Shown here: positions 6,930 to 57,447 of the stretch, piece after piece
Position numbering within the stretch: position 1 is the first letter of the stretch
How the letters are laid out: the number at the start of each line of letters is the position of its first letter
Virus record (IMG/VR): IMGVR_UViG_3300044701_003953
Coordinates: 124,001 to 188,000 of that record
Direction: 5' to 3' (one strand)
DNA length: 64,000 bases
Notes under the pieces: model-generated
The model's input: the letters and a program-made list of their open reading frames with translations, nothing else
Database searches by the model: none
Told to the model about the DNA's origin: nothing
Program-made: the position numbers and the translations under genes

Positions 6930-7898
6930 ATGGAAAAAAGAACTCTGCGTTGGGTACTAGCCCACGAACCAATCGAGATCTTCATCCGCGCCGCAGAAAA
7001 ATTTGCTAAATCCATCAGCGAGAAGACCAACGGTGCTATCAGCATCGAGATCATGACAGCTGAGCAATATGGCAAACAGTATCACGGTATGGAAAAGGTC
7101 GACACACAGTATCGTTACGATCTCATCAAGCACTTAGAAGCTGGTGAACTCGAAATGAGCCAGATGTACACAACCACATTAGGTACACATTATGACCAGC
7201 AACTGCTGGCCCTTGACATGCCTTACATTTTCGCTGATCACGATCATGTAGCTCGTGTACTTGATGGTGAAATCGGCGTTAGCCTCCGTAAGAGCCTCAG
7301 CGAGAAGACCAACATGGCTTCCCTGGCTTTCACATACTCGGGTGGTTTCCGCGTACTGCCTTCTGCTAAGAAGATCACAAGCATCACAGAACTCGCTGGC
7401 GAAAAAGTCCGCGTTGGTAGCCCTGTTTCGTTAGAAACATTCAAGGCCCTAGGTTGCGAAGCCGTTGACGGCATCAAAATCGAAGAGCTGGGCGAAGCGA
7501 TCGGCGACGGTCGTATCGTTGCTGGTGAATCCACATACCCACGCCTCTACGGTACAGAGCAGAACATCGCTCCTTCCAAGACTGCCAAGGCAGTCATCAA
7601 CACAGAGCACAGCCTATTCTTGACAACTATCCTGATCAACAAGGATATCTGGAATAGCTTCAGCGCAGAACTACAACAGTTCATGCTGGAAGCCGCACAC
7701 GAGGCTGCTCTGGAAGAGCGTAAAGAAGCACTGCTTGACATCCAGAAGAACCAGGCTCGCCTGCGTGCCGACGGTGTTGAAGTGGTTGATCTTCCTGCCA
7801 CAGAAATCGACTTGTTCAAGAACAAGACAGCAGTCGTATACGACGTATTAGCTGACATGTTCCCAGCTGGTCTGATCTCTAGCATCAAGAACGCCTAA
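6930..7898 (+). CDS. dctP: TRAP-transporter substrate-binding protein (DctP family), no signal peptide
   Basis: LALDMPYIFADHDHV, LAFTYSGGFRVL, LAGEKVRV motifs; AGGAG RBS; ATAAATA at 6839-6845. Confidence 0.85.
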   Translation: MEKRTLRWVLAHEPIEIFIRAAEKFAKSISEKTNGAISIEIMTAEQYGKQYHGMEKVDTQYRYDLIKHLEAGELEMSQMYTTTLGTHYDQQLLALDMPYIFADHDHVARVLDGEIGVSLRKSLSEKTNMASLAFTYSGGFRVLPSAKKITSITELAGEKVRVGSPVSLETFKALGCEAVDGIKIEELGEAIGDGRIVAGESTYPRLYGTEQNIAPSKTAKAVINTEHSLFLTTILINKDIWNSFSAELQQFMLEAAHEAALEERKEALLDIQKNQARLRADGVEVVDLPATEIDLFKNKTAVVYDVLADMFPAGLISSIKNA

Positions 7899-14518: not shown

Positions 14519-15043
14519 TTATCCTTCGTAGATGGCTGAGTTGGCTTCGTGCTCAAATACTTCCACAGAGCGTAACTTTACACCTTGTCCCACTGGATAA
14601 CGGGCAGAAAATGTTTTTCCATTGGGCAAGGTATATTCGCGACCTTGTTGATAGGTCTCAAGGATGTCTTGCATGGTGTTGTAGGCCAGTTCGGCGAATT
14701 TTTCGCAGCCCACTGCTTCCACGATGCGTAGGTCGCAAATGCCACCTTGCTCCTGGAGCCCCAACTTGGCCATGTTTTTAAAGATCTCAAGATGGGGATC
14801 ATCTGAGGCCACTACCAAAGTGTGATCGAACATGTATTCGCTCCACTCTTTGAATGCTTTCAGTCCACCGAAGTCCATAACCCAATTGCGATCATCAAGG
14901 GTAGTAGACTCAAATGCAAGACGAATGCCAATGCTATAACCATGCAATAGGCTGCAATGACTGTGAGTGCTACGCCATTGACGGAAACAGCACGAAAGGC
15001 CGCGGTCATTACCATAAGTTTTTGTTGAAAGGAATTTTGCCAT
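14519..15043 (-). CDS. queD: 6-carboxytetrahydropterin synthase
   Basis: HSHCSLLHGYS, WVMDFGGLK, FDHT, GCEKFAE, VEVFEH. Confidence 0.92.
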   Translation of the reverse strand: MAKFLSTKTYGNDRGLSCCFRQWRSTHSHCSLLHGYSIGIRLAFESTTLDDRNWVMDFGGLKAFKEWSEYMFDHTLVVASDDPHLEIFKNMAKLGLQEQGGICDLRIVEAVGCEKFAELAYNTMQDILETYQQGREYTLPNGKTFSARYPVGQGVKLRSVEVFEHEANSAIYEG

Positions 15044-15148: not shown

Positions 15149-15967
15149 TCAATTGAAGAGAAAACGTCGATACCAAGGCGACTGTCCTTCTTGACGATCT
15201 ACTTCTATGTCCATGAGTTGATTATACACTATCTTCCTAGTGATATCAAGTCTTTCTTGTTTACTTTTGGCACCTAAAACTACCACAACGAAGTTTTGTC
15301 CGTTCTTTTCCACCATGAGTGCCACACACCACCCCGCGGCAAACGTGAAACCGGTCTTAGAGATCATGATTTCGTCAAACTCAAACAGCAGTGGACGATT
15401 GGTGTTCTGTAACTCTATGGTCCGGACCTTTTGTCGGAGTTTGATATCAAACAACGCCTGTTTCTGTACAGATGTTTCCACGATGAATGGGTAGCGAGCC
15501 GCGGCCTTCACCATTTCGGCTACTTCCGCAGCCGCGGCCATGTTGCCGGCATTCAGTCCCGATGGATCAACGAACTTAGCGGTAGGCATATTCAATTTCC
15601 GGGCGTGTTGATTCATGTCACGGACGAAGGCCTTTTGGCCCCCGGGATAATCGGCGGCTAGCGCATCAGCGGCTCGATTGTCGCTACGGATCAGCATGGC
15701 TCTCATGACATCTCGCCGTGTATGTGATCCTGCGGGTAATTTGCTTCCTCGGCGCACTGTGATGCGACGATCTAAGTCTTGGTCATGATCTAGTGCTACC
15801 ATAGCGGTCATGAGCTTAGTGATGCTGGCTATGCTCTTAGGAACATTAGAATCACTGTCTATCACTATTTCGTTTTTAGTGATATCATGTAACCAAATGG
15901 AAGGCGTCGATTCTTTGGCTAGTGCTGGAATACAAACCAGCGCCAAAGACAGTATCAATGATTTCAC
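15149..15967 (-). CDS. Peptidase S11 D-alanyl-D-alanine carboxy/endopeptidase (PbpG-like)
   Basis: Signal peptide; SITK (SxxK), SDN (SxN) and KTG motifs. Confidence 0.9.
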   Translation of the reverse strand: MKSLILSLALVCIPALAKESTPSIWLHDITKNEIVIDSDSNVPKSIASITKLMTAMVALDHDQDLDRRITVRRGSKLPAGSHTRRDVMRAMLIRSDNRAADALAADYPGGQKAFVRDMNQHARKLNMPTAKFVDPSGLNAGNMAAAAEVAEMVKAAARYPFIVETSVQKQALFDIKLRQKVRTIELQNTNRPLLFEFDEIMISKTGFTFAAGWCVALMVEKNGQNFVVVVLGAKSKQERLDITRKIVYNQLMDIEVDRQEGQSPWYRRFLFN

Positions 15968-18889: not shown

Positions 18890-19636
18890 TTATCTAGGTG
18901 CGTAGTCTTGCTGGAGTTTGATGTTGTCGATGAACTCTTTTTTCACGGCGGAGTCCAACTTAAATGCTCCATGTAGAACAGTAGTCTGGGTCAACGAACT
19001 ATGTGCCATGATGCCACGATTCTCGCAACAGCCGTGTGTGGCTTGGATATATACACCAACATCTTTGCTGTCAGTGGCCTTCATGATCTCACGAGCGATA
19101 TCATTACAGAGTTCTTCTTGTAAGGTTCCTCGGCGAGCACACCACTGTGCGATGCGAGTGTATTTGCTGAGGCCGATCAGTTTCTGTGCGGCAAGGATGC
19201 CAATATAAGCAACCCCAACAACGGGTTGATGATGATGGCTACACATACTACGAAGTTCACTACGAACCACGAGCATGCCCTCGTAACGGTCTTCCGAATC
19301 GTTTGGAAACGCTGTGCAATCTGGTGCTGGGTCATATCGACCTCCCATTATTTCGTTGAAGTACATCTTGGCCAATCGACGTGCTGTGCCCTTTGAATTG
19401 GGGTCGGTTTCCCTATCGATGAGCAAACGGTCTAGCACTAGTTCAAACGCTTCGGTGGCTTCGTCGATCAGTCGCGCTTTATCTTCTTCGCTTACATAGT
19501 CGCTGACATTATCGCCTGCCCAGAAACGCTTGTTATCACGTTTCATCTTGAAGCGGATAGCATCGCCTAAGTATGCTTCTTTGTAACCACTGTCGCCTGC
19601 CATCGCATCAAGTGCTGTTTGTTGTTTATCTGTCAA
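18890..19636 (-). CDS. folE: GTP cyclohydrolase I
   Basis: TARRLAKMY, SMCSHHHQP, GLSKYTR, LQEEL, HGCCENRG. Confidence 0.95.
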   Translation of the reverse strand: MTDKQQTALDAMAGDSGYKEAYLGDAIRFKMKRDNKRFWAGDNVSDYVSEEDKARLIDEATEAFELVLDRLLIDRETDPNSKGTARRLAKMYFNEIMGGRYDPAPDCTAFPNDSEDRYEGMLVVRSELRSMCSHHHQPVVGVAYIGILAAQKLIGLSKYTRIAQWCARRGTLQEELCNDIAREIMKATDSKDVGVYIQATHGCCENRGIMAHSSLTQTTVLHGAFKLDSAVKKEFIDNIKLQQDYAPR

Positions 19637-19669: not shown

Positions 19670-20248
19670 TTAGATTATTCTTATTTTCCTGAGGTCAGGA
19701 TACATTTTAGCACGAGGCTCTTCATTATGCGAGCCCAACATTACCAAACCTTTTTCTGCTTCTTCGGGTGTGGGTCTGTAATGATATCCCACTTCGAATA
19801 CTTGCTGTTCCTGCCATGGTGATATATTTAGGTCGCGGCCGTCATATCGTTGGCGGATCACTTTATTATAGAACTGTTCGTCGTCTGTGAGGATAGCACC
19901 ACCACGGCCGATCTCGAGTGGTTTGTCGAAACCAAAGCTCAGGCATTGTAACATACCCGGACGATACATATCACGTCTGAGCAAGCGAGCCGAATCCCAT
20001 ACACGTGAAGAACGGAAGCGATACTCTCCTACCCATTCTTCGTCAATGAGCTGATACTCTATTCCTAATCTTTTAAAAATCATAGGGACAGACAGATAAG
20101 TGAATGCTGTGAACTCTACTTTGCTGGGCTGGTCGTAGCGGAAACAAAGTTCGAGAGCGTGTGTACAACAGTCAGTCATGATAACATAAGGCGCCCCGGT
20201 GTAGTGCGCCAATGCTTGTTCGAAATCTGCTATGCTCTTAAACGACAT
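19670..20248 (-). CDS. Compact DegT/DnrJ/EryC1/StrS-like PLP aminotransferase
   Basis: DCCTHALEL, WDSA, LSFGFDKPLEIGRGGAILTDD (PLP Lys), YDGR, GYHY. Confidence 0.75.
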   Translation of the reverse strand: MSFKSIADFEQALAHYTGAPYVIMTDCCTHALELCFRYDQPSKVEFTAFTYLSVPMIFKRLGIEYQLIDEEWVGEYRFRSSRVWDSARLLRRDMYRPGMLQCLSFGFDKPLEIGRGGAILTDDEQFYNKVIRQRYDGRDLNISPWQEQQVFEVGYHYRPTPEEAEKGLVMLGSHNEEPRAKMYPDLRKIRII

Positions 20249-21209
20249 CTCGGCGATACCATTCCCATGCGTGTTCGATCATTTCATATAGATCGTATTT
20301 AGGCCGCCAACTGCTGGCACTCATCAACTTGTCAGCACTGGCCGTCAGCAAAGCAGGATCGCCGGCACGCCGATCTCCATACTTTTCAGGCCAGCGTGTG
20401 CCAGTGACTTGTTCAGCAGTCCTGACCACTTCTAAGTTGCTGGCACCACGATTGGTGCCGATGTTGTAGACACCATCGAGATCTTCTTCGATAGCCACAC
20501 GGATGGCCGACGCGATATCTGCTACATGGATGTAGTCACGGACGCAAGTGCCGTCGGGCGTGTCAAAGTCAGTGCCATTGATCACGAATTCTTTTTCGTG
20601 TAGCACGGCTTCTAGGTATCTCGCGATGATGTGCGTGGCTTCTTTTTCTTGACCATGCCTGCTTCCAGGATCGGCACCACATACATTGAAGAAACGGAAT
20701 GCGGTATACTTGAGCCCATACGCCATCTTGTAGTCGGCGAGTATCTGTTCAAACATTAGCTTGCTCCAACCATAGGGAGAGATGGGCACAGTGGGTCCAT
20801 CTTCCTTTAGCGGGACGATGCTGGGGTCGGGATTACCATATGTGGCCGCTGAACTAGCGAAAACGATCCTGGTCTCTGGACTGTGTTTACGGACCATATC
20901 CAAGAAACGGATGGAACGTGCCACGTTGTTTTCGTAATATTCGCCGGGGTCGGTCATGGAAGGACCTACTAGGCTAGTTCCAGCACAATGCACGATAGCA
21001 CGTGGTCTATGTTCTTTAATAGCATGTTCAACAGCCGCACTATCAAACCCATCCACGATGGTCTGGTGCCAGTTATTGGACACCGGGCGGCTGCGTCGAT
21101 CTACACCGATGACCCAGTATTTTTTCTGGTCCGCTAGTTCCAACCCAACCTGGCCACCGATGTATCCACCGGCGCCAGTGACTAGGATAGTATCAATACT
21201 TTGATTCAC
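20238..21209 (-). CDS. galE: UDP-glucose 4-epimerase-like NAD-dependent epimerase
   Basis: TGAGGYIG, SSAATYG, YGWSK (YxxxK), FRFFNVCGA, GTCVRDYIHV. Confidence 0.9.
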   Translation of the reverse strand: MNQSIDTILVTGAGGYIGGQVGLELADQKKYWVIGVDRRSRPVSNNWHQTIVDGFDSAAVEHAIKEHRPRAIVHCAGTSLVGPSMTDPGEYYENNVARSIRFLDMVRKHSPETRIVFASSAATYGNPDPSIVPLKEDGPTVPISPYGWSKLMFEQILADYKMAYGLKYTAFRFFNVCGADPGSRHGQEKEATHIIARYLEAVLHEKEFVINGTDFDTPDGTCVRDYIHVADIASAIRVAIEEDLDGVYNIGTNRGASNLEVVRTAEQVTGTRWPEKYGDRRAGDPALLTASADKLMSASSWRPKYDLYEMIEHAWEWYRRDVV

Positions 21210-22371
21210 TAGTATGCTTTCTGTAGTCTACGGTGTTGCGTAACCACTGCTCGCCTTGTCCTTCCAAGATGTCACAGATGCGATCGATGGTGCCATCGTT
21301 ATAGTCTGAAATCTTGCCCATGTCTGGATGGGGTGCTTCTAACAATGGCTTCAGTTTGTTGATAGCATCATCTAGGCTCCATGGAACGTAAAGTCGGCTA
21401 GCATCATTTGAAAAAGTTTCAGGAAAGCTACGATATGCAGGGTAAAGAACATTACACCCCAGAGTGTCGGCTTCGGATACAGTGTTAGATACCCAGTCTT
21501 GAAGAGCACAATTAAAGAGAACACGACTATCATTAAGAAGGGCATAGTAATCATTTTTTTCCAAGTCCTCGTGTAATGACAGCAATCCGCGGGCCTGTAG
21601 GTCTCGTGTCCGCTTCATGTATGAATCGTTGTTGCTACGCAATTTAGCGCCCGAGAAGATGGCAAACTCCACACCCGAATCGGGATAACGGCGATGCCAT
21701 TCTTCGATGAGATCCATGTAAAAGTCAGGTTGCTTTTCTTGGTCCCAGCGAGCGGCAAAGCCAACCCGTAAGGCACGGTCCTGGAAAGGTTTCAATTCAC
21801 CTGGCACACGGCCACGCACTTCGTCCTTGCCAAAAGCAAGTCCGGAGATGTTGTAGATTGGGGCTTCCCAGCCAGCGATTTTCATGTGTGCCACCATCTC
21901 TTCGTTGGTAGCCAGGACCGTGTCTACGAATGAGTCCACCATCTTTTCATAAGTTGACATCCACTTCTGCATGCCCCAGACATGAACGAAATCATCGGGG
22001 TCAATAGTTTGTGCAAGACAACGAACGGCGATACGAGGGCGAAGAGCAGGATCGATTTGATCCATAATGTAAGGCAAGCTCTCGATACCGGGCTGGAACA
22101 TATCTTCAAAATAGATGACATCTTCTCCATTGACTTCTCCTGCTTTCATCTTTTTAACGAGATTCATGAGTTGGCTCATACCAAAGTAGGTTCTGCCATG
22201 AGCATCCAGGACCTGGCCAGTGACGATGGCCTTGTCGTTACTGAGTGTTTCACCTTCGACGATTTCGTAATCGATACCTCGACGCTCAAACACCGCACGA
22301 TTCCACTCTTGTAACTGTAGAGTGTAACGTGCCTTGTAGGGCTCTAGGCCCATGTACCATAACTTACGCAT
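21193..22371 (-). CDS. GT-B (GT4-like) glycosyltransferase
   Basis: VGFAARWDQEKQP, ALQDWVSNTVSEA, YPAYRSFPE; probable start MRKLW at 22371. Confidence 0.75.
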   Translation of the reverse strand: MRKLWYMGLEPYKARYTLQLQEWNRAVFERRGIDYEIVEGETLSNDKAIVTGQVLDAHGRTYFGMSQLMNLVKKMKAGEVNGEDVIYFEDMFQPGIESLPYIMDQIDPALRPRIAVRCLAQTIDPDDFVHVWGMQKWMSTYEKMVDSFVDTVLATNEEMVAHMKIAGWEAPIYNISGLAFGKDEVRGRVPGELKPFQDRALRVGFAARWDQEKQPDFYMDLIEEWHRRYPDSGVEFAIFSGAKLRSNNDSYMKRTRDLQARGLLSLHEDLEKNDYYALLNDSRVLFNCALQDWVSNTVSEADTLGCNVLYPAYRSFPETFSNDASRLYVPWSLDDAINKLKPLLEAPHPDMGKISDYNDGTIDRICDILEGQGEQWLRNTVDYRKHTSESKY

Positions 22372-22939
22372 TGTTTTTCCTGTAATTTCCAATGGTTAAT
22401 TGCCTTACCACAAAAGGTTGATCCAACACCGAATGCACGATGTATTTGGCCATCTTGTCGGAGTCGATCTTTGAAAGTCTAATACGATCATCAGTTGTCC
22501 TGGGAGTATCAACCAGTCCAGGCTTCACTAAGACCACATCACATCTTGCTTCGAGATCGTTCCACGCCCATTGTGATGCCATTTCTAGAGCAGCTTTTTC
22601 GGAAGCATAATGAGCCCGCCCTAAAGGGTGTTGTGGACTGTCGGGGCCCGATCTCATGTCGTTAACTATGCTGCCAATATTAACGATCTTCTTCGGCTGG
22701 TCTCTCCAACTACGCCAGAGCCTAGTAAAAATCTCAACCTGGAAAAAACGTTCATGGGCATTGTTAACGAACATGTCAGCATCGGCTGACATTTCCACGA
22801 TTCTTTTTTGGGTTTCAACATCTGATATATTAAACCCAGCACTCCGAGAGATACCGACCACGTCGTGACCGCGCTTACAAAATTCTTCAGATAAAGATTT
22901 TCCAATCCCCGAAGTATTTCCGGTCACGATGATTTTCAT
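22364..22939 (-). CDS. Short-chain dehydrogenase/reductase
   Basis: IVTGNTSGIG, FVNNA, IVNIGS, YASEK (YxxxK), VKPGLVDT. Confidence 0.88.
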   Translation of the reverse strand: MKIIVTGNTSGIGKSLSEEFCKRGHDVVGISRSAGFNISDVETQKRIVEMSADADMFVNNAHERFFQVEIFTRLWRSWRDQPKKIVNIGSIVNDMRSGPDSPQHPLGRAHYASEKAALEMASQWAWNDLEARCDVVLVKPGLVDTPRTTDDRIRLSKIDSDKMAKYIVHSVLDQPFVVRQLTIGNYRKNNA

Positions 22940-27858: not shown

Positions 27859-28962
27859 TTATACCAATAAAATTCTTCGTTTGGCGAAATTTTGGACTTC
27901 TTTGGGCAATAGATCAAACATTCGATCTCCTCGTAGTTTATCCATCATCAACGTATGTGCAATGGTATGGTGGAACAGATCTTCTGTGTTGCCTATCATT
28001 GATCGAGCCTGCTGATAGACACGTCGATTGTGATTTTGATTTCTGTCCGGCGCAAAATCAATTTCAGGCAGGAGGTCCTTTAACTCATAGGGCAAAGTCG
28101 ACAAAGAAAGGAAATCCGGTCCTTCTAATACTGATGTATTTAGAGTTATAGATTTATCTCGGCACCAATCTACCAATTCTTGTAGGAACCATATATTCAG
28201 TAGTCCCAGTGTGCAAAAAACAAATATTTCTGTGTCGGGTCTTTGCTTCCGATATGCCAGTAGAGATTCTATATTTTTTTCTGCACGATCCCAGTCTAAT
28301 CCCGATCTTACCATCTGCCCGGGCTCTCCGATAGCTTCCAGACTGGCATAGACTCTTGTCTTCTTAAAATGTTTCCAAAGTTCGGTGACTTCTTTTCCTC
28401 GGTAGTTTAAAGTAGTGAGGTTGGTATTGTATCTCAATGAAATGTTTCTGCTCCGACCATTTTCGATCAATGTATCTAACAATTTCCAATGATCGGGGTT
28501 TAGCATAGGTTCGCCGCCAGTGAAATAGATTTCTGTAAGTTCTTCGTTAGTGATTCCCTCTAACATAGGCCATACATTGAATCTTTCAAATTCGAGATCT
28601 CCGACCAAACTAGTCCAACTGCTACTGAAGTTGGGACTACAGATACGGCAAGTGAGATTGCAGGTGTTGTTGTTTCTGAGGTCGAGATATTTTATCGAAT
28701 CTCTTTGCCCAACATCGTCACCATAGTTTTTCCTGTAGGATTCTAAACCATTTTGCTCGTCTTCCCAACAACCTCGACAGCCTTGGGGACATGACCCCGA
28801 TAACATCTCTTGCTGTAGATCCTTAAAAGTATCTACCCCTTGGAAATTTTCCCCAGATCTGGCTAACTTGTAATCATAGATACAGCAAGGAGCAATCTTA
28901 CCGTCGGGGTAGACAGTGATGCTATTCCAAACGGCATTACAGATAAAAGGCTTGCCTGTCAT
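27859..28962 (-). CDS. Radical SAM protein with Cys-rich (SPASM/twitch-like) N-terminal region
   Basis: CNLTCRIC (CxxxCxxC), FTGGEP, YNTN; N-terminal C...PCC...CxxC. Confidence 0.85.
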   Translation of the reverse strand: MTGKPFICNAVWNSITVYPDGKIAPCCIYDYKLARSGENFQGVDTFKDLQQEMLSGSCPQGCRGCWEDEQNGLESYRKNYGDDVGQRDSIKYLDLRNNNTCNLTCRICSPNFSSSWTSLVGDLEFERFNVWPMLEGITNEELTEIYFTGGEPMLNPDHWKLLDTLIENGRSRNISLRYNTNLTTLNYRGKEVTELWKHFKKTRVYASLEAIGEPGQMVRSGLDWDRAEKNIESLLAYRKQRPDTEIFVFCTLGLLNIWFLQELVDWCRDKSITLNTSVLEGPDFLSLSTLPYELKDLLPEIDFAPDRNQNHNRRVYQQARSMIGNTEDLFHHTIAHTLMMDKLRGDRMFDLLPKEVQNFAKRRILLV

Positions 28963-32647: not shown

Positions 32648-32908
32648 TTACAGCGTACGACCAACAGTCTCAAGGATGGTGGTCAACTCTTCGTGTTCGT
32701 GAGTGGTTTCACCGAACTTGCTCTTTTGTGCGATCTTGATCGCTTTTTTCAAGATAGCAGGTTTGACTTCTAGTTCTTCTGCGATGGCCTTGATGGTGTC
32801 ATTGAGGCCGGCGCTGAGGTCTTCGACTTCTTGTAGCACAGCGATGCCTTCATTGATGAGTTGTGTGAGCTTGGCTTTCTGTTCGCCGGAAAACATTCTT
32901 GAGGACAT
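32648..32908 (-). CDS. Small helical protein, T4 DsbA/GapR-like dsDNA-binding candidate
   Basis: 86 aa, LNDTIKAIAEELEVKPAILKKAIK pattern; AAGGAG RBS and TTGACT-17-TATACT promoter (32933-32961). Confidence 0.5.
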   Translation of the reverse strand: MSSRMFSGEQKAKLTQLINEGIAVLQEVEDLSAGLNDTIKAIAEELEVKPAILKKAIKIAQKSKFGETTHEHEELTTILETVGRTL

Positions 32909-32957: not shown

Positions 32958-34127
32958 TCAACCCTGGAAACTTTCTAATAGTTCCATAGCCGCTTCAGTG
33001 ACTCCGGGTTCCCAGGTATGGTATCCTACCCAATCATGATCGTAATACATCGGGGAGATCCACACTATTCTGCGCTCGAAATCGGGACTTTTAGATGCCA
33101 CTTTGATTTTTTGGTCGGCATAAGAACGATTGCCATCAAACTCGAAAATATATCGTTTAGCTTCGAGTTTCACACCGGCACGGCCCTTGTGTACATGTTC
33201 GAAATGATGCTGTAAATTACTGTAACTCCATTGCACGAATTCGTCTGTATTAAAATAACTGTACTGTGCATAATCACTATGGTGTTTTCTGTCGATCGGC
33301 TTCTTGAAATCTTTGCGAAGGTGCATAAATGGTCTCACTATTGCGGTAGCCCATTTAAAATTTACATAATGCCACCACCACCAATCTGAGATAGTCTTGA
33401 CATTTTCGGGATTGACTTCTATGAGGTTTTCGGTGATCCTTCTTACATACCATTGACCGAATTCTGGATCGGCATTGATGCTTTGATCACGATCAAAGAA
33501 ACTAGCGATGAGATGCTGATTGTCTTTAAATGGTAGGAGATGTTGATCGTTATTGACCAGATGCTTGAACGCCGGAAGAGTTGGCCCAAACACAGCGTCG
33601 CCTGGATCGCCATGTATGAGTATGTATTTTTCTAAGGTTTCATTGCACATCTCAAAATCTAACAGTTGTATGTATCGGAATCTTCCTGATATATATTTTC
33701 TAAAAAAGTCAAAGTTTTCGATGATCGATTCGGTGCTCATGACTATATCAATGATCCCTAAATCGGATTCGGAAAGATTCTTTAAGAATGAAACTAATAC
33801 AGCAGTAGAATCAATTCCGCCGCTCCACATCAGTGCTATTCTTTTGTTTGCCTTTTTAGCGTAGTTAAAGACTTCTATAGCTCGTTGATCAAACAAGTCG
33901 TGTAACTTATAGTCGACAAATTTAAGTTCAGGCATAGGATAATGATGATCGTATGGTGCTTGCCATGGAGTGGAAAAATTTCCAGTCCTGGCACGCAGAT
34001 CTTTAGCGCCTATCACCAAGTGCGCAAACTTTGACCATAGGTGCCCGCTTCGGTGCTTGATATCAAGTTCGGCTACTAGATGATTGTCAACAGCTAGGCT
34101 GTTTTTTATACCTTCAACATGGTTCAT
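32958..34127 (-). CDS. Asparagine-synthetase-C-terminal-like ATP pyrophosphatase (copy 2)
   Basis: PP-loop WSGGIDST; HGDPGDAVFG aligns with the AsnB GEGADE.FG motif; no N-terminal Cys glutaminase domain. Confidence 0.7.
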   Translation of the reverse strand: MNHVEGIKNSLAVDNHLVAELDIKHRSGHLWSKFAHLVIGAKDLRARTGNFSTPWQAPYDHHYPMPELKFVDYKLHDLFDQRAIEVFNYAKKANKRIALMWSGGIDSTAVLVSFLKNLSESDLGIIDIVMSTESIIENFDFFRKYISGRFRYIQLLDFEMCNETLEKYILIHGDPGDAVFGPTLPAFKHLVNNDQHLLPFKDNQHLIASFFDRDQSINADPEFGQWYVRRITENLIEVNPENVKTISDWWWWHYVNFKWATAIVRPFMHLRKDFKKPIDRKHHSDYAQYSYFNTDEFVQWSYSNLQHHFEHVHKGRAGVKLEAKRYIFEFDGNRSYADQKIKVASKSPDFERRIVWISPMYYDHDWVGYHTWEPGVTEAAMELLESFQG

Positions 34128-34797
34128 TTTTTAGAAGTTCAATTGATTTATTGATCGATTCGGTGAAATAGTATGCACTAATAGGTATCAGTCTGATCTT
34201 TTTCTCGATGTCTGCTTTAATCTCATTGAGAGGACGACTATAATCTAGATCCGATAAAATGCGAAAAAGTATGCCTTGGAATTCTTCGAGTATTTTTTTC
34301 GGTACATCTTTGTTGATTATTTCTCGATCGACAAACTCTTGTACAGCGACATCATTGGGCACTGTCAAGGATATAAACTTTTTAAACACTCTTAGACCTT
34401 TTTTGAGAGTCTCGACCTGTCGTAGATCCCTATCAAGTATATGATAGTTATGATCTCTAGATTTTTGTATAAAATCAAAAAGGAAATGCATTTTTTCTTT
34501 ATACTCTATATCGTCCTGCGTGAACTTAGTCCTTGCTGGCACGAGCCTATATGAAGGATTTGTAAAATACATGTCGATCTCTATCCGTATTTTTTCTCCA
34601 TTGGCTATAGTGACGTTCATGCATCGATCATTGTTCAGGAGATTTGGTCGGTAGTTAACGATGCCGTTTAAATCTACTAGATACAGCAATTCATGGTTCA
34701 TGGTTATCAACTGCAAATATTTTAAACTTTCGTAATCACTGTTAACCATAATGAATCTATTACGAAACGTATTGAACAATGCATATTCATTTGACAT
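34114..34797 (-). CDS. Hypothetical partner protein (copy 2)
   Basis: Start MSNEY at 34797 with AAGGA RBS; homologous to 35962-36699 (TVPND...FVD.EI). Confidence 0.7.
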   Translation of the reverse strand: MSNEYALFNTFRNRFIMVNSDYESLKYLQLITMNHELLYLVDLNGIVNYRPNLLNNDRCMNVTIANGEKIRIEIDMYFTNPSYRLVPARTKFTQDDIEYKEKMHFLFDFIQKSRDHNYHILDRDLRQVETLKKGLRVFKKFISLTVPNDVAVQEFVDREIINKDVPKKILEEFQGILFRILSDLDYSRPLNEIKADIEKKIRLIPISAYYFTESINKSIELLKNEPC

Positions 34798-34804
34798 AAA
34801 ACTA

Positions 34805-35965
34805 TTATCCTTTAAAAGTTTCAAGTCGATAACAAACTTGCTCATTGAGATAGTCTTCCCAACGAAAGTAGCCTTTCCAATTTCGATCAAAGCATATCGG
34901 GTTGTCGGATGAAGTGCGAGTAATGACGTCGGGTGGGGCACCGGCTAACTTTGGTTTATTCTCAAAATAGAATTCATTTTTATCGAGCTCGAAAATATAT
35001 CGTTTGGCTTCGATCTTGTGAGACTTCATGCCGTCCTTTAAAAGATTTTTGAGATTGCTATAACTCCAATGCTGGAAGTATTCGGTGTTATAGAAAGTAT
35101 TTTCTGCGAACGTTTTTTGATTTTCGATGCTGATGCCTTTTTTTACATCTTTTTGGGAAAAGATAAAAGGTCTCTGGCAGCTGAATTCCCATTTGTAATT
35201 GTAATATGTCCACCACCACCAATCACTGACGGTAGTCACGTTGTCGGGGTTCACTTCTTCGATGTTATCGGTTATTTTTTTGACTATCCAATTTCCAAAA
35301 TTTGGAACAGAGTACGGCAGATGTTTACCGGGCTGACAGAGATCAATGAGTTTTTTAAAATGTTTTTTATAACTTTCTTTATGTTCGCCACTGATTATCA
35401 ACTCTCGATATGCAACAGTAGTTGGGCCGTAGAGACAATCTGCTGGGTCGCCATGCACTAAAATATTTTTATCAAGAAAATCGTCATTAAGGTCTAACAA
35501 CGAGTAATGGAAACATTTTATTTTATTAGAAATAAATTTCATATAAAATTCAAAATTTTCCACCATTGAGCCAGTGTTCATCACCACAGTCAATAATTCG
35601 AGATCTGTGCTACTTAGATTTTTAATAAAAGACGCCAAGACTGCGGTAGAGTCAATACCACCACTCCAAAGTACAAATATTTTTTTATTTGTTTTTTTGG
35701 CCACAGAAAATATTTCTAATGCTCTTCGATCTAATAGATCTGAGAGAGAATCGTTGATGAATTTGAACTCGGGCGCAGAATAAAAACTATTGCTAGGAGC
35801 ATTCCACGGAGTAGTGAAAGTACCCAATCGTGCTCTTAGGTCGTGTACTCCGATAAAACTATCTAGAGTCGATTTCCACATTTTTCCGTAGGGATTTTTT
35901 AGGTTGCCGGCAATGTTGAAGTTGCGCACGTCAACCATGATGGAATCTTCTATTTTTATAGTCAT
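34805..35965 (-). CDS. Asparagine-synthetase-C-terminal-like ATP pyrophosphatase (copy 1)
   Basis: WSGGIDST, HGDPADCLYG, SDWWWW, WSYSNL, EAKRYIFE shared with copy 2. Confidence 0.7.
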   Translation of the reverse strand: MTIKIEDSIMVDVRNFNIAGNLKNPYGKMWKSTLDSFIGVHDLRARLGTFTTPWNAPSNSFYSAPEFKFINDSLSDLLDRRALEIFSVAKKTNKKIFVLWSGGIDSTAVLASFIKNLSSTDLELLTVVMNTGSMVENFEFYMKFISNKIKCFHYSLLDLNDDFLDKNILVHGDPADCLYGPTTVAYRELIISGEHKESYKKHFKKLIDLCQPGKHLPYSVPNFGNWIVKKITDNIEEVNPDNVTTVSDWWWWTYYNYKWEFSCQRPFIFSQKDVKKGISIENQKTFAENTFYNTEYFQHWSYSNLKNLLKDGMKSHKIEAKRYIFELDKNEFYFENKPKLAGAPPDVITRTSSDNPICFDRNWKGYFRWEDYLNEQVCYRLETFKG

Positions 35966-36699
35966 TGTTCTTTTAACACTGATAGTAAGGTTTTTTTAAA
36001 AACATCAGATAAGAATATTTTTTTCCAATTGGTATTGACGTAGTCCAACTTACCAAATTCCAATGAGTTTATTTTTTCTTCGATGATTTTTTTTGCATCG
36101 TCTTTTCGATAGTTTACGTTAATCAATAAATTTATTATATCTGATTTAAATGGTCTTGCTCGTCGAATAGCGTTGTTTCTAATTTCAATTTCCCAGTCAA
36201 CAAAGTTATCGATGTTTTCGTCGTTTGGTATAGTGAGTTTTACAAACTCTTTTAACTCGATAAACCCGTTGATTTCATCGCGGAACCTTCTTTTTTCTTG
36301 TTCCTCAAATTCGTCGACGATTTTTTCCAGGACGTGCAAAATTTTCTGCAATAACAATAAGTTGGATCTCAATATAGGGTCTGGAGGCGAATGCGAGTCC
36401 ACGATTTTAGTTAGATGCATACCGGGGTCGGCGTCGAGTTTGATGTGTTTTACTGCTTTTGGTATACAGCCGAACTCATGACAGTTGTTATTGTCTATAT
36501 TGGAAGTATCTTTTTCAGATTCGAATTTTGATATGTTGATACAGAAAAAAAACTTCTGTTTCATAAGCACGAACTGTAACAGCTTCATGACTTTATGATT
36601 ATCATCTATTAGATAAAAGCAATTTTCGGGCAACCCAAGAAGACCATATACGTCGGCATCGGATTCGAATCTTCTAAAAAAGGGAAAATGTGCTGTCAT
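35962..36699 (-). CDS. Hypothetical partner protein (copy 1)
   Basis: 245 aa; TIPND...FVDWEI; preceded by TTGACT-17-TAAAAT promoter (36728-36756). Confidence 0.7.
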   Translation of the reverse strand: MTAHFPFFRRFESDADVYGLLGLPENCFYLIDDNHKVMKLLQFVLMKQKFFFCINISKFESEKDTSNIDNNNCHEFGCIPKAVKHIKLDADPGMHLTKIVDSHSPPDPILRSNLLLLQKILHVLEKIVDEFEEQEKRRFRDEINGFIELKEFVKLTIPNDENIDNFVDWEIEIRNNAIRRARPFKSDIINLLINVNYRKDDAKKIIEEKINSLEFGKLDYVNTNWKKIFLSDVFKKTLLSVLKEQ

Positions 36700-36828
36700 T
36701 TAATTTCTAACTCAACGGTAGTTTTCTATTTTACTATCTTTTAAAAGATTAGTCAATAGACTTATGGTAGATTGTGCTGGGCCCGAGGGCCCAGGTTATG
36801 CTAAAATGGTTTTTCTAATACGACTTGT

Positions 36829-38112
36829 TCAGTGGAACTGCTCTTCCTCTGTGGAACCTTTGAGGGCTTGTGTGGATGCGTCAGCTTCGATGGTCGTAGT
36901 GACAGCGTCGAAGTAACCTGTGCCTACTTCCCTTTGATGCTTAACAGCTTCAAAACCACGGCTCGCATCCGCGAACTCACGTTCTTGTAACTCCACGAAA
37001 GCAGACATACCGTTCCTAGCATAACCATGAGCAAGGTCAAACATGCCATGATTAAGAGCATGGAATCCAGCAAGTGTGATGAATTGAAAACGGTAGCCCA
37101 TTGCTCCAAGTTCACGTTGGAAACGGCTAATTGTGTCTGCATCTAAGTTCTTCCTCCAGTTGAATGATGGCGAGCAGTTGTAGGCTAACATCTTACCTGG
37201 ATGGTGCTTGTGTACTTGCTCTGCGAATTCCTTCGCGAATTGTAAGTCGGGCTTTCCTGTTTCACACCACACGAGGTCTGCGTAAGGTGCGTAGGCGACG
37301 GCTCTGCTGACTGCTTGATCGATTCCGTTACGGGTTCTGTAGAATCCTTCAACAGTTCTTTCACCAGTAAGGAAAGGCTTGTCGTTGTCATCAATATCGC
37401 TAGTGATAAGGTCACCGGCTTCGGCATCAGTTCGTGCAATAACAAGAGTAGGCACGCCCATAACATCACTAGCGAGGCGAGCGGCAACAAGTTTATTGAT
37501 GGCTTCTCTGGTTGGTACAAGGACTTTTCCTCCCATGTGTCCGCATTTTTTAGCAGACGCTAATTGGTCTTCGAAGTGTACACCAGCGGCACCAGCTTCG
37601 ATCATGGCCTTCATCAGTTCAAATGCGTTTAACACGCCACCAAAGCCGGCTTCGGCATCAGCTACGATGGGTGCGAAGAAGTCGTGATCATCTTTACCTT
37701 CCATCCACTGTATCTGATCGGCACGACGAAACGTGTTGTTGATCTTGCGGACCACGGCGGGCACAGAGTTCACTGGATACAAGCTCTGATCAGGATACAT
37801 CTCTCCGGCCAAGTTGGCATCACCTGCCACTTGCCAACCGCTTAGGTATATGGCTTTGAGTCCTGCTTTGACTTGCTGTAACGCCTGCATGCCTGTCAAC
37901 GCACCCAAGGTGTTGACATAGTCCTCAGTGGTCAGTAGGTTCCATAATTTCTTGGCTTGGTCTATCGCGAACTGATCGGGATATACACGACTGCCTTGCA
38001 AGCGAACTACATCATCGGCGGTGTAGTCTCGTTTGATGCCCAACCACCTTGGGTTGGTACTCCAATCCTGTTGTATCTGATAGGCTTTCCAGCTACGAGT
38101 GTTTTCAGACAT
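36829..38112 (-). CDS. aceA: Isocitrate lyase
   Basis: KKCGHMGGK signature, [43 protein letters not shown]; GAGGAG RBS. Confidence 0.98.
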
Positions 38113-40586: not shown

Positions 40587-40892
40587 TTAAATAGAAAACT
40601 CGAAATTTGCTGGTTGATCATTGATACGCACATTACTGATTCTCAGCATATCTCGTGGATCATTAAGTTTTTCTACCTTTAAGCGATGCGCCCCTGGCCC
40701 CAGCTTTACTGTGATCAGTTCTTCAACATAAGTGTCTTCGTGTTGCCAGACATAGGTACGTTCAGTCAAAAGATCCGAGTCCACATATATGCGATAGGCA
40801 GGTCGATACACATAAGCACCAGTTAACCCATGGGGTATATCTTCGCCGGACCAGCGTACATCAATACGTATCTCTATCTGCCGGTCATTCAT
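40587..40892 (-). CDS. Hypothetical beta-rich protein
   Basis: 101-aa ORF overlapping upstream stop. Confidence 0.6.
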   Translation of the reverse strand: MNDRQIEIRIDVRWSGEDIPHGLTGAYVYRPAYRIYVDSDLLTERTYVWQHEDTYVEELITVKLGPGAHRLKVEKLNDPRDMLRISNVRINDQPANFEFSI

Positions 40893-42222
40893 CGCTGAAA
40901 ATCCCTGGTGGGATTCCTCGTGCTCCTACTCCGCCTTTTTTCCTAAGAGCGGATAGGTCTCTGTAAGCCTTTAGCAAAGCATCGAGCATGACGGGCATCG
41001 GAGATTTCTGTAACAGATATTGTGCCTGACGAACTTGGTCGGCATCCATGCTAGACATCCTGTCTGACAGATCTTTAAAGTTATTTGCCAGTTTTTTATG
41101 TAATGTCGCGATAGTCAGGCGTCCGTACCCGGGTATCAATACTTCACTGTCGGACATTGGATTTGTGGGATCCTTAGCGTATAAACTTTCGATAAGGTTG
41201 AACGCTTTCATCATCTTTTTCAATGTATTTGTTTTTACATCAACAGTCATCGAAGTGCTGTATCTTGGATCGCGGGCCATCTTTTTATTTGATGCTACGA
41301 CACCGACTCCGGCCGCATCTTCATTAGAATGACGTCGATTTAGCCAATCTTTTTCTTGGTGGGCATCTCGACCGTTTCTTCCTAATATCCTGCTGGCATT
41401 CCGGTCCCCGCGAGCTATGGCCCGGATTTCTTGATCTATCTCGCCCTTTACTGAGTCTTTGCTGATATTTTGAATATTTTTCGCTGTGCGTAACGCGATT
41501 AATGCATCACGTGCTGTACCGGCATCAGTGGTGGCACAGCCCGGAGTTCCTGCGACGCATGCGGCCACTGCCGCGGCACCGAGAGCTTGCTTCCATCCTT
41601 CGGTAACGACCAGTTTCTGGTCCATGATGTGCTTTGCTTCTTCACTATAGCGTCCAAACAAGTCGGCGATTATCTGCTTACGAGTCGCAGGGTCGGCATC
41701 TTTGTACTGCTGTCGCACTTCTGTTGCTGACCGCATAGGCGCCCCAAGAACGGTGAAGTCCACCGTAGGTACCGTTAGGATATAGCCCGTCTTGTCGAAT
41801 GTATCGGCATCTTTTAGATCTGCGGGCAGAGGCTGGAAATATGTTGGGCTACCGTCTTTTTTAGTTCCCATACGGAAACGAGGATCTTCGGCCATGTCTT
41901 TTTCGCTGACCGCGAAGATCAATATAGTCGATTCTGCTGGATAATTTGCTGTTAGCTCAGGGACCTTGTAGGGTTCACGGCTTTCGATCACACGATCCAT
42001 TGGCACCCCTGTGAGCGCCATGAACACGGATTTGTCTGAAAAGTTGAAAGGACTCTTGGGGGGATCTACTTTGTTGCTGGTAGCGATGTAGACGCGATCT
42101 CGGCCAAATTTCTTGACGAGATAGTCATACACCGCTTTATGCCCTTTGTGGAAGGGTTGGAAGCGTCCGGGGTAGACTACGACAAGATTTTGCGTGTCTT
42201 CAAATAAATCAGCAACAAACAT
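40885..42222 (-). CDS. HxGH nucleotidyltransferase (cytidyltransferase-like) with extra C-terminal modules
   Basis: YPGRFQPFHKGH, MRSATEVR; ATAAATA at 42244-42250. Confidence 0.8.
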   Translation of the reverse strand: MFVADLFEDTQNLVVVYPGRFQPFHKGHKAVYDYLVKKFGRDRVYIATSNKVDPPKSPFNFSDKSVFMALTGVPMDRVIESREPYKVPELTANYPAESTILIFAVSEKDMAEDPRFRMGTKKDGSPTYFQPLPADLKDADTFDKTGYILTVPTVDFTVLGAPMRSATEVRQQYKDADPATRKQIIADLFGRYSEEAKHIMDQKLVVTEGWKQALGAAAVAACVAGTPGCATTDAGTARDALIALRTAKNIQNISKDSVKGEIDQEIRAIARGDRNASRILGRNGRDAHQEKDWLNRRHSNEDAAGVGVVASNKKMARDPRYSTSMTVDVKTNTLKKMMKAFNLIESLYAKDPTNPMSDSEVLIPGYGRLTIATLHKKLANNFKDLSDRMSSMDADQVRQAQYLLQKSPMPVMLDALLKAYRDLSALRKKGGVGARGIPPGIFSDE

Positions 42223-57390: not shown

Positions 57391-57447
57391 AGGTTTTTGC
57401 CATAATCATAAATAAAGTTATCATATCACTCAATGGAGACTTCCCCA

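What the first reader, a model, noticed from the sequence alone, without database searches (positions are those of the whole stretch)
32958..36756. Tandemly duplicated AT-rich module: unknown partner + glutaminase-less AsnB-like ligase
The order is promoter-A1-B1-A2-B2. B1 and B2 share the SGGIDS PP-loop, the GDPxD motif, an unusual SDWWWW block and E(S/T)F(Q/K)G ends. A1 and A2 are mutual homologs of unknown family. This fold adenylates carboxylates to form amides, as in AsnB, lasso cyclases and beta-lactam synthetases; QueC uses a related PP-loop (established). The block is visibly more AT-rich than its flanks. Inference: an undescribed two-component amide/isopeptide ligase system. It might amidate CDG in place of the missing QueC, or modify proteins or peptides, with the two copies diverged in specificity.
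Basis: partly seen in the sequence, partly recalled or inferred. Interest (0 to 1): 0.75.

Follow-up and report, generated by a model that had tools for sequence, protein, structure and literature searches.

The report
Phage ligase-plus-partner gene pairs
A large freshwater phage carries two old copies of an undescribed gene pair, a stripped-down asparagine-synthetase-like ATP enzyme plus a fast-changing helper protein of unknown fold. The same pair occurs in hundreds of uncultured phages and some bacteria, and there is no support for it replacing the queuosine enzyme QueC.

Summary
Four minus-strand genes lie in the order A1-B1-A2-B2 behind a promoter-like site. B1 and B2 are 42% identical (E 4e-113). 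A1 and A2 are 20% identical (E 4e-8), and both match one family profile. The block is 37% GC against 46% for the window.

B has no Pfam match. Its confident model (pLDDT 93) is an AsnB-type synthetase domain without a glutaminase domain (Z 10-12.6 to TsnB9, ASNS, beta-lactam synthetase and CarA; other PP-loop enzymes score 5.8 or less). A (model pLDDT 89) has no structural relative and no invariant residue, so it is probably not an enzyme.

A sits directly upstream of B in 32 of 43 lineages and often overlaps it. The pairs were duplicated and inherited as units. One phage fuses A and B. Candidate-phyla-radiation (CPR) bacteria keep an A-like protein upstream of B.

My best reading is an ATP-dependent carboxylate-adenylating amide ligase (B) with a non-catalytic specificity or acceptor partner (A). 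The substrate is unknown, though carboxylate-binding and transport genes recur nearby.

The QueC-substitute idea is not supported. B shows no QueC features, no TGT was found in any of 16 records, and B occurs in a complete genome that lacks FolE. The module is new within a known enzyme kind.

The parts
36728..36756 (-). Sigma-70-like promoter candidate TTGACT-17-TAAAAT upstream of A1. It follows a GC-rich palindrome (GGGCCCTCGGGCCC, about 36779-36792) that lies after the isocitrate lyase stop codon.
   Evidence: This is a consensus match only. The region holds no more such sites than shuffled sequence.
35962..36699 (-). A1, the partner protein of pair 1 (245 aa). It has a small N-terminal beta/alpha domain and a helical bundle.
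   Evidence: model pLDDT 88.9. No structural relative was found. Its stop codon overlaps the B1 start (ATGA).
34805..35965 (-). B1, an AsnB-type PP-loop synthetase domain without a glutaminase domain (386 aa).
   Evidence: pLDDT 93.2; Z 12.6 to TsnB9, about 11 to ASNS and BLS. It belongs to paralogue clade I.
34114..34797 (-). A2, the partner protein of pair 2. The start is revised to ATG 34797 (227 aa). The mechanical ORF runs from GTG 34941.
   Evidence: It overlaps the B2 start by 14 nt.
32958..34127 (-). B2, the second AsnB-type PP-loop synthetase domain (389 aa).
   Evidence: It belongs to paralogue clade II, which groups with the single-copy lineages.

Best explanation
Each pair is a two-gene module. 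B is an ATP-dependent, AMP-forming enzyme of the asparagine-synthetase (AsnB) synthetase-domain type. It binds ATP at the PP-loop (SGGIDS), adenylates a carboxylate, and lets an amine attack the acyl-adenylate to form an amide. B has no glutaminase domain, and most of these phages encode no separate glutaminase. The nucleophile is therefore free ammonia or, more likely, an amine on a second substrate. A is a non-catalytic, fast-evolving protein made from the same transcript and translationally coupled to B. It binds B and either sets what B acts on (adaptor) or is itself the acceptor. The two pairs in this window are ancient paralogues kept side by side, which points to two specificities.

Most likely substrate class: a small carboxylate metabolite, possibly ligated onto a protein amine as in Cap9/QatC-type conjugation. 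A peptide is the next option.

Shown: homology, fold, gene coupling, co-inheritance and one fusion. Inferred: catalysis, complex formation and the substrate.
For: Fold and motifs. The B model has pLDDT 93.2. VIA-align gives Z 12.6 to TsnB9 and 9.6-11.1 to ASNS, beta-lactam synthetase, AsnB and carbapenam synthetase. The next tier, NAD and GMP synthetases and LarE, scores 5.8 or less. Across 56 B proteins the SGGIDS loop, G172-D173-P174, K317, K337, R46 and R81 are invariant.

A is not an enzyme. Its 49-sequence alignment has no invariant column and 19% mean column identity. The fold has no match in PDB, AFDB or by VIA-wide.

A-B coupling. Of 86 A genes, 80 are followed by B within 200 nt. Of 43 lineages, 32 have an A-B pair. 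The stop and start codons overlap in this window. Three of three distant A hits found through A alone lie beside a B-type gene (directly upstream of one in two; flanked by a 376-aa gene and a cut ORF in the third). The best A match and the best B match between genomes belong to the same pair in 112 of 139 comparisons, against 58 expected. L075 encodes the C-terminal part of an A protein, a collagen-like linker and a full B in one ORF, while its sister lineage L076 has two overlapping genes.

Conservation beyond phages. In 13 candidate-phyla-radiation (CPR) bacterial loci, B is preceded by a 189-253 aa protein. One of these proteins (L101) has an Atlas predicted structure that matches, at TM 0.76/0.82, what appears to be the same viral cluster (same size and membership) as phage A.

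Ancient paralogy. See the tree. Ten positions are type-specific, including two in the W-rich helix.

Carboxylate theme near B in independent contexts. These are signal-less DctP-like proteins, TctC-like proteins and TctA in phages, an SSF symporter directly downstream of B in 6 CPR loci, and isocitrate lyase next to A1 in this window.
Against: No activity, complex or product has been observed, and I could not run a multimer prediction. A is not recognisable upstream of B in 11 of 43 lineages, so B may work alone or with other partners such as cupins. A has no conserved terminus or conserved nucleophilic residue that would mark it as an acceptor. The link to carboxylate-binding genes rests on about three independent DctP clades and a few TctC cases. 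DctP-like genes occur about once per 100 kb in these phages anyway. In the largest clade the module sits beside the DNA polymerase gene, which would equally fit a nucleic-acid target. PP-loop enzymes also catalyse sulfur transfer and other chemistry.
Confidence: 0.5

Rival explanations
1. DNA or nucleotide hypermodification. B amidates a carboxyl-bearing base in phage DNA or in a nucleotide precursor, as CmoY ligates glycine to 5-carboxymethylcytosine. A acts as a DNA-binding or targeting subunit.
For: A phage AsnB-like amide ligase that acts on DNA is known (PMC12783734). In 28 of 47 lineages the module lies one small gene away from the DNA polymerase gene, near a methyltransferase, a twitch radical SAM enzyme, a sulfotransferase, dCMP-deaminase-like genes and GT4 glycosyltransferases.
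Against: No C5-methyltransferase-like gene is in the record. The neighbouring methyltransferase is only generically similar to CmoA (E 0.001). B matches SpCmoY over only one 45-column motif at 40% probability. A and B have near-neutral pI (medians 6.25 and 6.9). Cellular homologues sit in metabolic or RiPP-like (ribosomally made, modified peptide) clusters, not DNA-modification contexts.
Confidence: 0.12
2. Peptide or protein maturation enzyme of the RiPP type (ribosomally made, post-translationally modified peptides). B forms a lactam, an isopeptide or a C-terminal amide on a peptide or on A itself. The conserved N-terminal 40 residues of A would act like a leader, and the variable remainder like a core.
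For: In candidate-phyla-radiation (CPR) bacteria the A-like/B pair lies in a same-strand cluster with a YcaO enzyme (167 bits) and a nitroreductase-family protein. Lasso cyclases and beta-lactam synthetases share this fold, from established knowledge. The most conserved part of A is its N-terminus. The phage record holds 11 radical SAM genes, and the one examined with NCBIfam (window 27859-28962) is a twitch-domain type with weak matches to SPASM peptide maturases.
Against: No precursor peptide, leader peptidase or RRE (RiPP recognition element) domain was seen among the annotated neighbours. No YcaO gene is in any of 16 phage records. A is predicted to be a well-folded protein of 180-250 aa. 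No acceptor or donor residue is conserved in A.
Confidence: 0.2
3. QueC substitute. B converts 7-carboxy-7-deazaguanine to the amide or nitrile in a phage 7-deazaguanine pathway that lacks QueC.
For: FolE and a PTPS/QueD-like gene lie in the window. FolE is in 10 of 15 relatives' records. No QueC is in the window's own record.
Against: No TGT/DpdA is in the own record or in 15 relatives' records. All radical SAM ORFs are 326-544 aa, larger than the roughly 210-250 aa I recall for QueE, and the one in the window is a twitch-type enzyme. B is AsnB-like by fold, and no QueC-type structure is listed. B has no invariant cysteine for the zinc site. A complete 69.6 kb phage has B without FolE, QueC or TGT. 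Candidate-phyla-radiation (CPR) and other bacterial homologues lie in unrelated contexts. The own record is only 59% complete, so absence of pathway genes there is weak evidence on its own.
Confidence: 0.03
4. A is a dedicated inhibitor or regulator of a potentially harmful enzyme B, with toxin-antitoxin-like logic, rather than a specificity factor.
For: The upstream small gene overlaps the downstream enzyme gene. The upstream partner evolves much faster. Cognate pairs are multiplied.
Against: No AsnB-type toxin is known to me. A lacks a recognisable DNA-binding domain. A fusion of A and B is hard to reconcile with an inhibitor that must be released. B persists without A in several lineages.
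Confidence: 0.05

Closest known systems
Asparagine synthetase B family synthetase domains (AsnB/ASNS, beta-lactam synthetase, carbapenam synthetase, TsnB9)
   Same: They share the PP-loop, the G-D-x-x-D motif region and the overall synthetase-domain fold (Z 9.6-12.6). The expected chemistry is carboxylate adenylation followed by amide formation.
   Different: B has no N-terminal Ntn glutaminase or pseudo-glutaminase domain. It does not match Pfam PF00733. Profile comparison with E. coli AsnB finds only the PP-loop. B has a conserved 70-residue N-terminal segment and a W-rich helix of its own, and a dedicated partner gene.
QatB-QatC and Cap9 (QueC-family enzymes that bind a partner protein and modify its N-terminus; PMC13279940, bioRxiv 10.1101/2025.04.06.647259)
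   Same: A PP-loop adenylating enzyme is paired with a mostly helical protein of orphan fold that has no active site, as QatB is described. This is a precedent for ligating a small carboxylate onto a protein amine.
   Different: B is AsnB-type, not QueC-type. A lacks the conserved N-terminal MG(T/G)S motif and the long disordered tail. The module is phage-encoded, not part of a defence operon with an ATPase and a nuclease.
CmoY of Synechococcus phage S-B43 (PMC12783734)
   Same: It is a phage-encoded, glutaminase-less Asn-synthetase-like ATP-dependent amide ligase.
   Different: CmoY is 271 aa, matches PF00733 (52.5 bits), lies between CmoA and CmoX and has no A-like partner. B aligns to it over only one motif. 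No CmoX-like gene is in this record.
QueC (7-cyano-7-deazaguanine synthase)
   Same: The PP-loop only.
   Different: B gives no family match, has no zinc-binding cysteines and has a different C-terminal half. The pathway lacks QueE and TGT in these records.
Lasso peptide cyclases (McjC type)
   Same: They are AsnB-derived enzymes that act with small partner proteins on a macromolecular substrate.
   Different: No precursor, leader peptidase or RRE (RiPP recognition element) was found near B in phages. Cyclases keep an N-terminal domain that B lacks. I did not compare structures directly, because none appeared among the PDB matches.

Membership tests
Asparagine synthetase B family (class II amidotransferase, PF00733) | PP-loop ATP pyrophosphatase motif SGGxDS | tested here: met
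   WSGGIDS is in B1 and B2. S101-G-G-I-D-S106 is invariant in 56 sequences.
Asparagine synthetase B family (class II amidotransferase, PF00733) | Synthetase-domain fold | tested here: met
   Z 12.6 (7ylz), 11.1 (9b6c), 11.0 (1mc1), 10.5 (1ct9) and 10.4 (1q19). Other PP-loop families score 5.8 or less.
Asparagine synthetase B family (class II amidotransferase, PF00733) | Sequence match to the family model above its cut-off | tested here: not met
   There is no PF00733 hit at E<=1. The own-genome scan gives 9.5 bits on 20 positions. hhalign against E. coli AsnB finds only the PP-loop.
Asparagine synthetase B family (class II amidotransferase, PF00733) | N-terminal Ntn glutaminase domain with catalytic Cys | tested here: not met
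   B is 386 aa. Its model aligns to residues 150-611 of TsnB9. No GATase family was hit, and the N-terminus reads MTIKIE.
QueC (PF06508) | Family model match | tested here: not met
   Nothing appears in Pfam. The own-genome scan finds nothing. The PADLOC QueC model gives 14.7 bits on residues 90-115 only.
QueC (PF06508) | Zinc-binding cysteine cluster (from established knowledge of QueC structures) | tested here: not met
   No invariant or nearly invariant Cys is found in 56 B proteins. B2 has a single Cys.
QueC (PF06508) | Pathway context: FolE, QueD and QueE upstream, TGT/DpdA downstream | tested here: not met
   FolE and PTPS are present. TGT is absent from the own record and from 15 relatives' records. 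All radical SAM ORFs are 326-544 aa, larger than the size I recall for QueE. The own record is 59% complete, so this test is weaker than the others.
CmoA-CmoX-CmoY DNA hypermodification | Adjacent Cx-SAM synthase and C5-methyltransferase-like CmoX | tested here: not met
   There is no PF00145 match in the record. The neighbouring methyltransferase matches SpCmoA only at E 0.001 over the generic SAM-binding region.
CmoA-CmoX-CmoY DNA hypermodification | Orthology of the ligase to SpCmoY | tested here: not met
   hhalign gives 40% probability over 45 columns around the G-x-x-D motif.
QatBC / Cap9-type protein N-terminal conjugation | Partner protein of orphan fold beside the PP-loop enzyme | tested here: met
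   A lies directly upstream of B. The A model has no PDB or AFDB relative. QatB is described in the same terms.
QatBC / Cap9-type protein N-terminal conjugation | Conserved N-terminal Met-Gly motif on a disordered tail of the partner | tested here: not met
   The N-termini of A proteins are not conserved, and the only column at 90% or more is L20.
QatBC / Cap9-type protein N-terminal conjugation | Stable complex of enzyme and partner | not testable with these tools
Indirect support comes from the A-B fusion in L075 and from co-inheritance.
Lasso peptide biosynthesis | Precursor peptide, leader peptidase and RRE (RiPP recognition element) near the cyclase | tested here: not met
   Pfam scans of neighbours in the window and in related loci showed none. 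I did not search for small precursor ORFs.

The most novel reading that the evidence does not exclude
A-B is a new kind of metabolite-to-protein (or metabolite-to-macromolecule) conjugation system used by phages. B adenylates a small carboxylate, supplied or held by the phage's own cytoplasmic DctP-like or TctC-like binding proteins. B then ligates it to an amine on A, or on a host protein that A recruits. The fast evolution and multiplication of A would reflect an arms race over targets. This would be an AsnB-fold counterpart of QueC-family deazaguanylation, on the phage side.
Probability: 0.2. Interest if true: 0.85.

Novelty: new variant of a known kind. Interest (0 to 1): 0.6.

Why it matters
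The module is common. At least 500 stretches in IMG/VR encode a B relative, and the A family forms 335 clusters at 50% identity. In a large clade of freshwater and marine jumbo phages it sits next to the DNA polymerase gene in one to three ancient copies. It recurs in candidate-phyla-radiation (CPR) and other bacteria.

None of Pfam, PHROGs, NCBIfam or PADLOC gave A or B a family-level match; the only hits were weak ones (E 1e-5 or worse, far below the curated cut-offs) around the PP-loop. None of 50,697 deposited phage genomes has a match, and I found no paper describing the module.

Working out its substrate would assign a function to a widespread orphan enzyme-partner pair. It could also reveal a new amide-forming modification of a metabolite, protein or nucleic acid during phage infection.

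Tried and rejected
- **Sequence libraries.** Pfam, PHROGs, NCBIfam and PADLOC gave only weak PP-loop matches for B (best PHROG E 1.4e-5) and nothing meaningful for A, whose only Pfam hits were at E 0.016 or worse.
- **Deposited phage genomes.** Megablast and tblastn against 50,697 records found no match.
- **PDB by sequence profile.** Only the PP-loop matched.
- **Fold searches for A.** PDB Foldseek, VIA-wide, AFDB clusters and the Atlas gave only generic helical hairpins and A's own viral cluster.
- **A as a diverged glutaminase domain.** Rejected. A is a beta/alpha domain plus a helical bundle, and its best GATase-like Atlas row has TM 0.24.
- **A as a DNA mimic or nucleic-acid binder.** The median pI of 6.25 gives no support.
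- **A separate glutaminase as ammonia donor.** Class I GATase is in only 1 of 16 records, although it lies near A-B in two distant lineages.
- **YcaO partnership in phages.** Found in 0 of 16 records.
- **Unrecognised upstream ORFs as divergent A.** hhalign was negative for most clusters.
- **Expression evidence.** Only DNA runs from freshwater metagenomes hold the sequence, so I did not lay reads.
- **Multimer modelling.** Not possible, because the two prediction jobs went to the single chains.


Full report
**Setting.** The window is bases 124001-188000 of a 207,520-base IMG/VR viral record that CheckV rates 59% complete. One B protein of this phage also lies on a 339,769-base contig. The DNA polymerase is T4-like. 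Its closest cultured relatives are Sinorhizobium phage Phosso (51% identity) and Agrobacterium phage Atu_ph07 (49%), followed by Rak2-like jumbo phages. The sequence occurs only in freshwater metagenome runs. The nearest hits in genome collections are short contigs binned with Polynucleobacter MAGs. That is a weak host hint at most.

Four minus-strand genes lie in the order A1 (36699-35962), B1 (35965-34805), A2 and B2 (34127-32958).
- A1 and A2 are 20% identical, E 4e-8. Both match a family profile at E below 1e-56.
- I place the A2 start at ATG 34797, 8 nt after the B1 stop and behind AAAGGA. This gives 227 aa and the N-terminal pattern of the orthologues.
- A1/B1 overlap by ATGA and A2/B2 overlap by 14 nt. 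Each A is therefore translationally coupled to the B that follows it.
- One of three 10-of-12 promoter-like sites in the region, the best score there, is TTGACT-17-TAAAAT at 36756-36728. It lies after a GC-rich palindrome that follows the isocitrate lyase gene. It is only a consensus match.
- The block is 37.4% GC, against 46.3% for the window.

**The duplication is ancient and the low GC is inherent.**
- Relatives keep the order Dps ... [A-B]n, a conserved 84-88 aa protein, DNA polymerase, methyltransferase, with n = 1, 2 or 3.
- In a maximum-likelihood tree, B1 and B2 fall in two separate well-supported clades of 8 lineages each. A third paralogue clade exists. Single-copy lineages group on the B2 side.
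- Between genomes, the best A match and the best B match belong to the same pair in 112 of 139 comparisons, against 58 expected. The pairs were therefore duplicated and inherited as units.
- B is lower in GC than the polymerase gene in 28 of 28 lineages, and A in 23 of 23. AT-richness is a trait of the module, not a sign of recent transfer into this phage.

**What B is.**
- B matches no Pfam or NCBIfam family. PHROGs and PADLOC give only weak PP-loop hits.
- None of 50,697 deposited phage genomes has a match.
- The large protein collection holds 168 relatives. All are from metagenomes and almost none are named.
- Across 56 B sequences the PP-loop S101-G-G-I-D-S106, G172-D173-P174, K317, K337, R46, R81 and several tryptophans are invariant. 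No cysteine is invariant.
- The AlphaFold model is confident (pLDDT 93.2, pTM 0.91).
- VIA-align gives Z 12.6 to the hydroxyamidotransferase TsnB9 and 9.6-11.1 to human ASNS, beta-lactam synthetase, E. coli AsnB and carbapenam synthetase. The alignments cover residues 5-383 of the model and start at about residue 150 of those proteins.
- NAD and GMP synthetases and LarE score 5.8 or less, and no QueC-type structure is listed.
- Foldseek agrees weakly. BFVD and AFDB hold full-length predicted relatives at TM up to 0.81, some auto-named 'asparagine synthetase domain'.
- Profile comparison with E. coli AsnB finds only the PP-loop. Comparison with phage CmoY finds only the G-x-x-D motif.

B is therefore a very divergent, glutaminase-less member of the AsnB synthetase-domain fold, and its ATP-binding signature is intact. 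That it adenylates a carboxylate and forms an amide is inferred from the family's established chemistry.

**What A is.**
- The A family evolves fast. Orthologues are 29% identical where the matching B orthologues are 50% and the neighbouring 86-aa protein is 86%.
- A 49-sequence alignment has no invariant column, and only L20 reaches 90%. The best-conserved part is an N-terminal motif of about 40 residues.
- The model (pLDDT 88.9) shows a small beta/alpha domain followed by a bundle built on a 49-residue helix.
- Nothing significant is found in PDB, in AFDB clusters or by the Foldseek-independent search. The Atlas returns only a viral cluster of hypothetical proteins.
- An exhaustive profile search finds 335 clusters. 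The 150 best listed are all 82-302 aa, with no added domain among them.
- The pI is near neutral.

A is thus a stand-alone protein that is probably non-catalytic.

**A and B belong together, but not universally.**
- In 83 loci (47 lineages), 80 of 86 A genes are followed by B within 200 nt, four more after a gap of about 290 nt, and two directly follow a B gene.
- Seventy-three of 119 B genes have a recognisable A upstream, and 32 of 43 lineages have at least one A-B pair.
- The remaining B genes often follow an unrelated ORF of 130-250 aa. hhalign does not link most of these to A.
- Three distant A hits, found through A alone, each lie beside a B-type gene: directly upstream of one in two cases, and between a 376-aa gene and a cut ORF on a short contig in the third.
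- In L075, one ORF encodes the C-terminal part of an A protein, a collagen-like linker of about 50 residues and a complete B. The sister lineage L076 has two genes that overlap by ATGA. Such a fusion is the usual signature of physical partnership.

**The module is not confined to phages.**
- B relatives at 24-30% identity lie on long contigs of candidate-phyla-radiation (CPR) bacteria, including a complete Kaiserbacteria chromosome. Others lie in Verrucomicrobiota, Thermoanaerobaculia, Planctomycetota, Myxococcota and Bacteroidia.
- In 13 CPR loci, B is directly preceded by a 189-253 aa protein with no Pfam family. One of these proteins (L101) has an Atlas predicted structure that matches, at TM 0.76/0.82 over 202 residues, what appears by size and membership to be the same viral cluster as the phage A model.
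- In a Haliscomenobacter MAG the upstream protein is a phage-type A (E 3e-10).
- The CPR pair lies in a same-strand cluster: YcaO, a nitroreductase-family protein, a beta-propeller protein, the A-like protein, B and an SSF symporter.
- In other bacteria B is flanked by a cupin, and in two Verrucomicrobiota loci also by a canonical 564-aa asparagine synthase. Cupins also flank B in some phage loci.

**Clues to the substrate.**
- Outside the polymerase-linked clade, phage A-B arrays lie next to DctP-like TRAP binding proteins (7 lineages, about 3 independent clades) and TctC-like proteins, with a TctA membrane protein within a few kilobases in two loci. Other neighbours are D-glutamate cyclase, a beta-keto-acid cleavage enzyme, a Rieske oxygenase, diiron-oxygenase-like proteins and, in two lineages, a class I glutaminase.
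- The DctP-like proteins have no signal peptide, so they are probably cytoplasmic. The TctC-like proteins do have one.
- This phage has three DctP-like genes, though none is adjacent to A-B. It has an isocitrate lyase gene directly upstream of A1.
- DctP-like genes occur about once per 100 kb in these phages. Adjacency in 7 of 47 lineages exceeds the few percent expected by chance, but it rests on few independent events.
- Together with the SSF symporter in CPR loci, the recurring theme is binding or uptake of a carboxylate. All the solved structural neighbours also act on small carboxylates.
- This favours a small carboxylate as the adenylated substrate. The YcaO context and the nature of A keep a peptide or protein acceptor in play.

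**The QueC idea.**
- FolE and a PTPS/QueD-like gene are in the window, and FolE is in 10 of 15 relatives' records.
- No TGT/DpdA is in any of the 16 records.
- The 11 radical SAM ORFs of the record are 326-544 aa, larger than the roughly 210-250 aa I recall for QueE. The one in the window is a twitch-domain type (277 bits).
- B has no QueC sequence or structural features.
- A CheckV-complete 69.6 kb phage has B but no FolE, QueC or TGT.

I rate this idea at about 3%.

**Comparison with known systems.**
- In chemistry, B most resembles AsnB-family amide synthetases. It fails family membership on the sequence model and on the glutaminase domain.
- In architecture, the closest analogue is QatB-QatC/Cap9. 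There a PP-loop enzyme is paired with an orphan helical protein, binds it and modifies its N-terminus. B is not QueC-type, however, and A lacks the N-terminal glycine motif.
- CmoY shows that phage AsnB-like ligases can act on DNA. B is not its orthologue, and CmoX is absent.
- I found no paper that describes this module.

**Verdict.**
- The module is real, conserved and undescribed. I classify it as a new variant of a known enzyme kind with a novel partner.
- The mechanism is inferred at about 0.5 confidence for the general scheme (adenylating amide ligase plus non-catalytic partner).
- The substrate is open. I rank a small carboxylate first, possibly transferred to a protein, then a peptide, then DNA.
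- Interest is 0.6.

Noticed in passing
L075:18-1814 (IMG/VR UViG 3300021962_009815): This is a natural fusion: the C-terminal part of an A-family protein, a collagen-like Gly-X-Y linker of about 50 residues and a full B domain in one ORF of 598 aa, cut by the contig end. The sister lineage L076 has the two as separate overlapping genes.
   Followed up: partly
G000:C1:106050-112862 and 63284-67747 (same record, outside the window); window 27859-28962: The record holds 11 radical SAM genes of 326-544 aa. Six are in one tandem array and three in another. The one in the window is a twitch-domain radical SAM protein (NF033640, 277 bits) beside a methyltransferase and a sulfotransferase-like gene next to the DNA polymerase gene.
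   Followed up: no
window 36829-38112 (-): A phage-encoded isocitrate lyase (PF00463, E 8e-108) lies between DUF3008/Dps and A1. It is absent from that position in the related loci L001, L003, L005, L007 and L009.
   Followed up: partly
window 6930-7898 (+), 57433-58536 (+); G000:C1:16408-17250: There are three DctP-like TRAP solute-binding protein genes. The two in the window have no signal peptide, so they are probably cytoplasmic; the third was not checked. Such genes occur in 10 of 16 related records. In some relatives they are split by TAA stops and sit directly beside A-B arrays.
   Followed up: partly
window 18890-19636 (-) and 14519-15043 (-): GTP cyclohydrolase I and a PTPS/QueD-like gene are present, with no QueC, no ORF of the size I recall for QueE, and no TGT in the record. 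The same pattern holds in most relatives, so the pterin or deazapurine product is unclear.
   Followed up: partly
window 32648-32908 (-): An 86-aa protein is 71-86% identical across lineages, far more conserved than A or B. In the polymerase-linked loci it lies between the last B gene and the DNA polymerase gene, and it has its own promoter-like site at 32961-32933. It gives a weak match to T4 DsbA (PF11126, E 0.024).
   Followed up: partly
L101-L112, L116, L123 (CPR bacterial MAG contigs): A conserved same-strand cluster holds YcaO, a nitroreductase-family protein, a beta-propeller protein, an A-like protein, a B-like protein and an SSF symporter. One Saccharibacteria contig has two copies 19 kb apart. 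I know of no description of this cluster.
   Followed up: partly
L101:4207-4881 (CPR partner protein): The helical C-terminal half of its Atlas structure resembles clusters that carry Pfam HI1402_helical and Caudo_TAP (tail-fibre assembly protein) families at TM about 0.5. This is a lead only and was not seen for the phage A1 model.
   Followed up: no
window 19670-22939 (-), 40885-42222 (-): Nucleotide-sugar-type genes lie here: a short DegT-like fragment (192 aa), a GDP-mannose-dehydratase-like epimerase, a short-chain dehydrogenase fragment and a 445-aa cytidylyltransferase-like protein. The window also holds a D-Ala-D-Ala carboxypeptidase (15149-15967), a HIT protein, a phosphoribosyltransferase and a MazG-like protein.
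   Followed up: no
L078 (G005:76007-81104): Two further PP-loop proteins of about 306-311 aa flank the A-B pair and match only the N-terminal part of QueC at about 20-24 bits. They may form a third viral PP-loop family associated with B.
   Followed up: no
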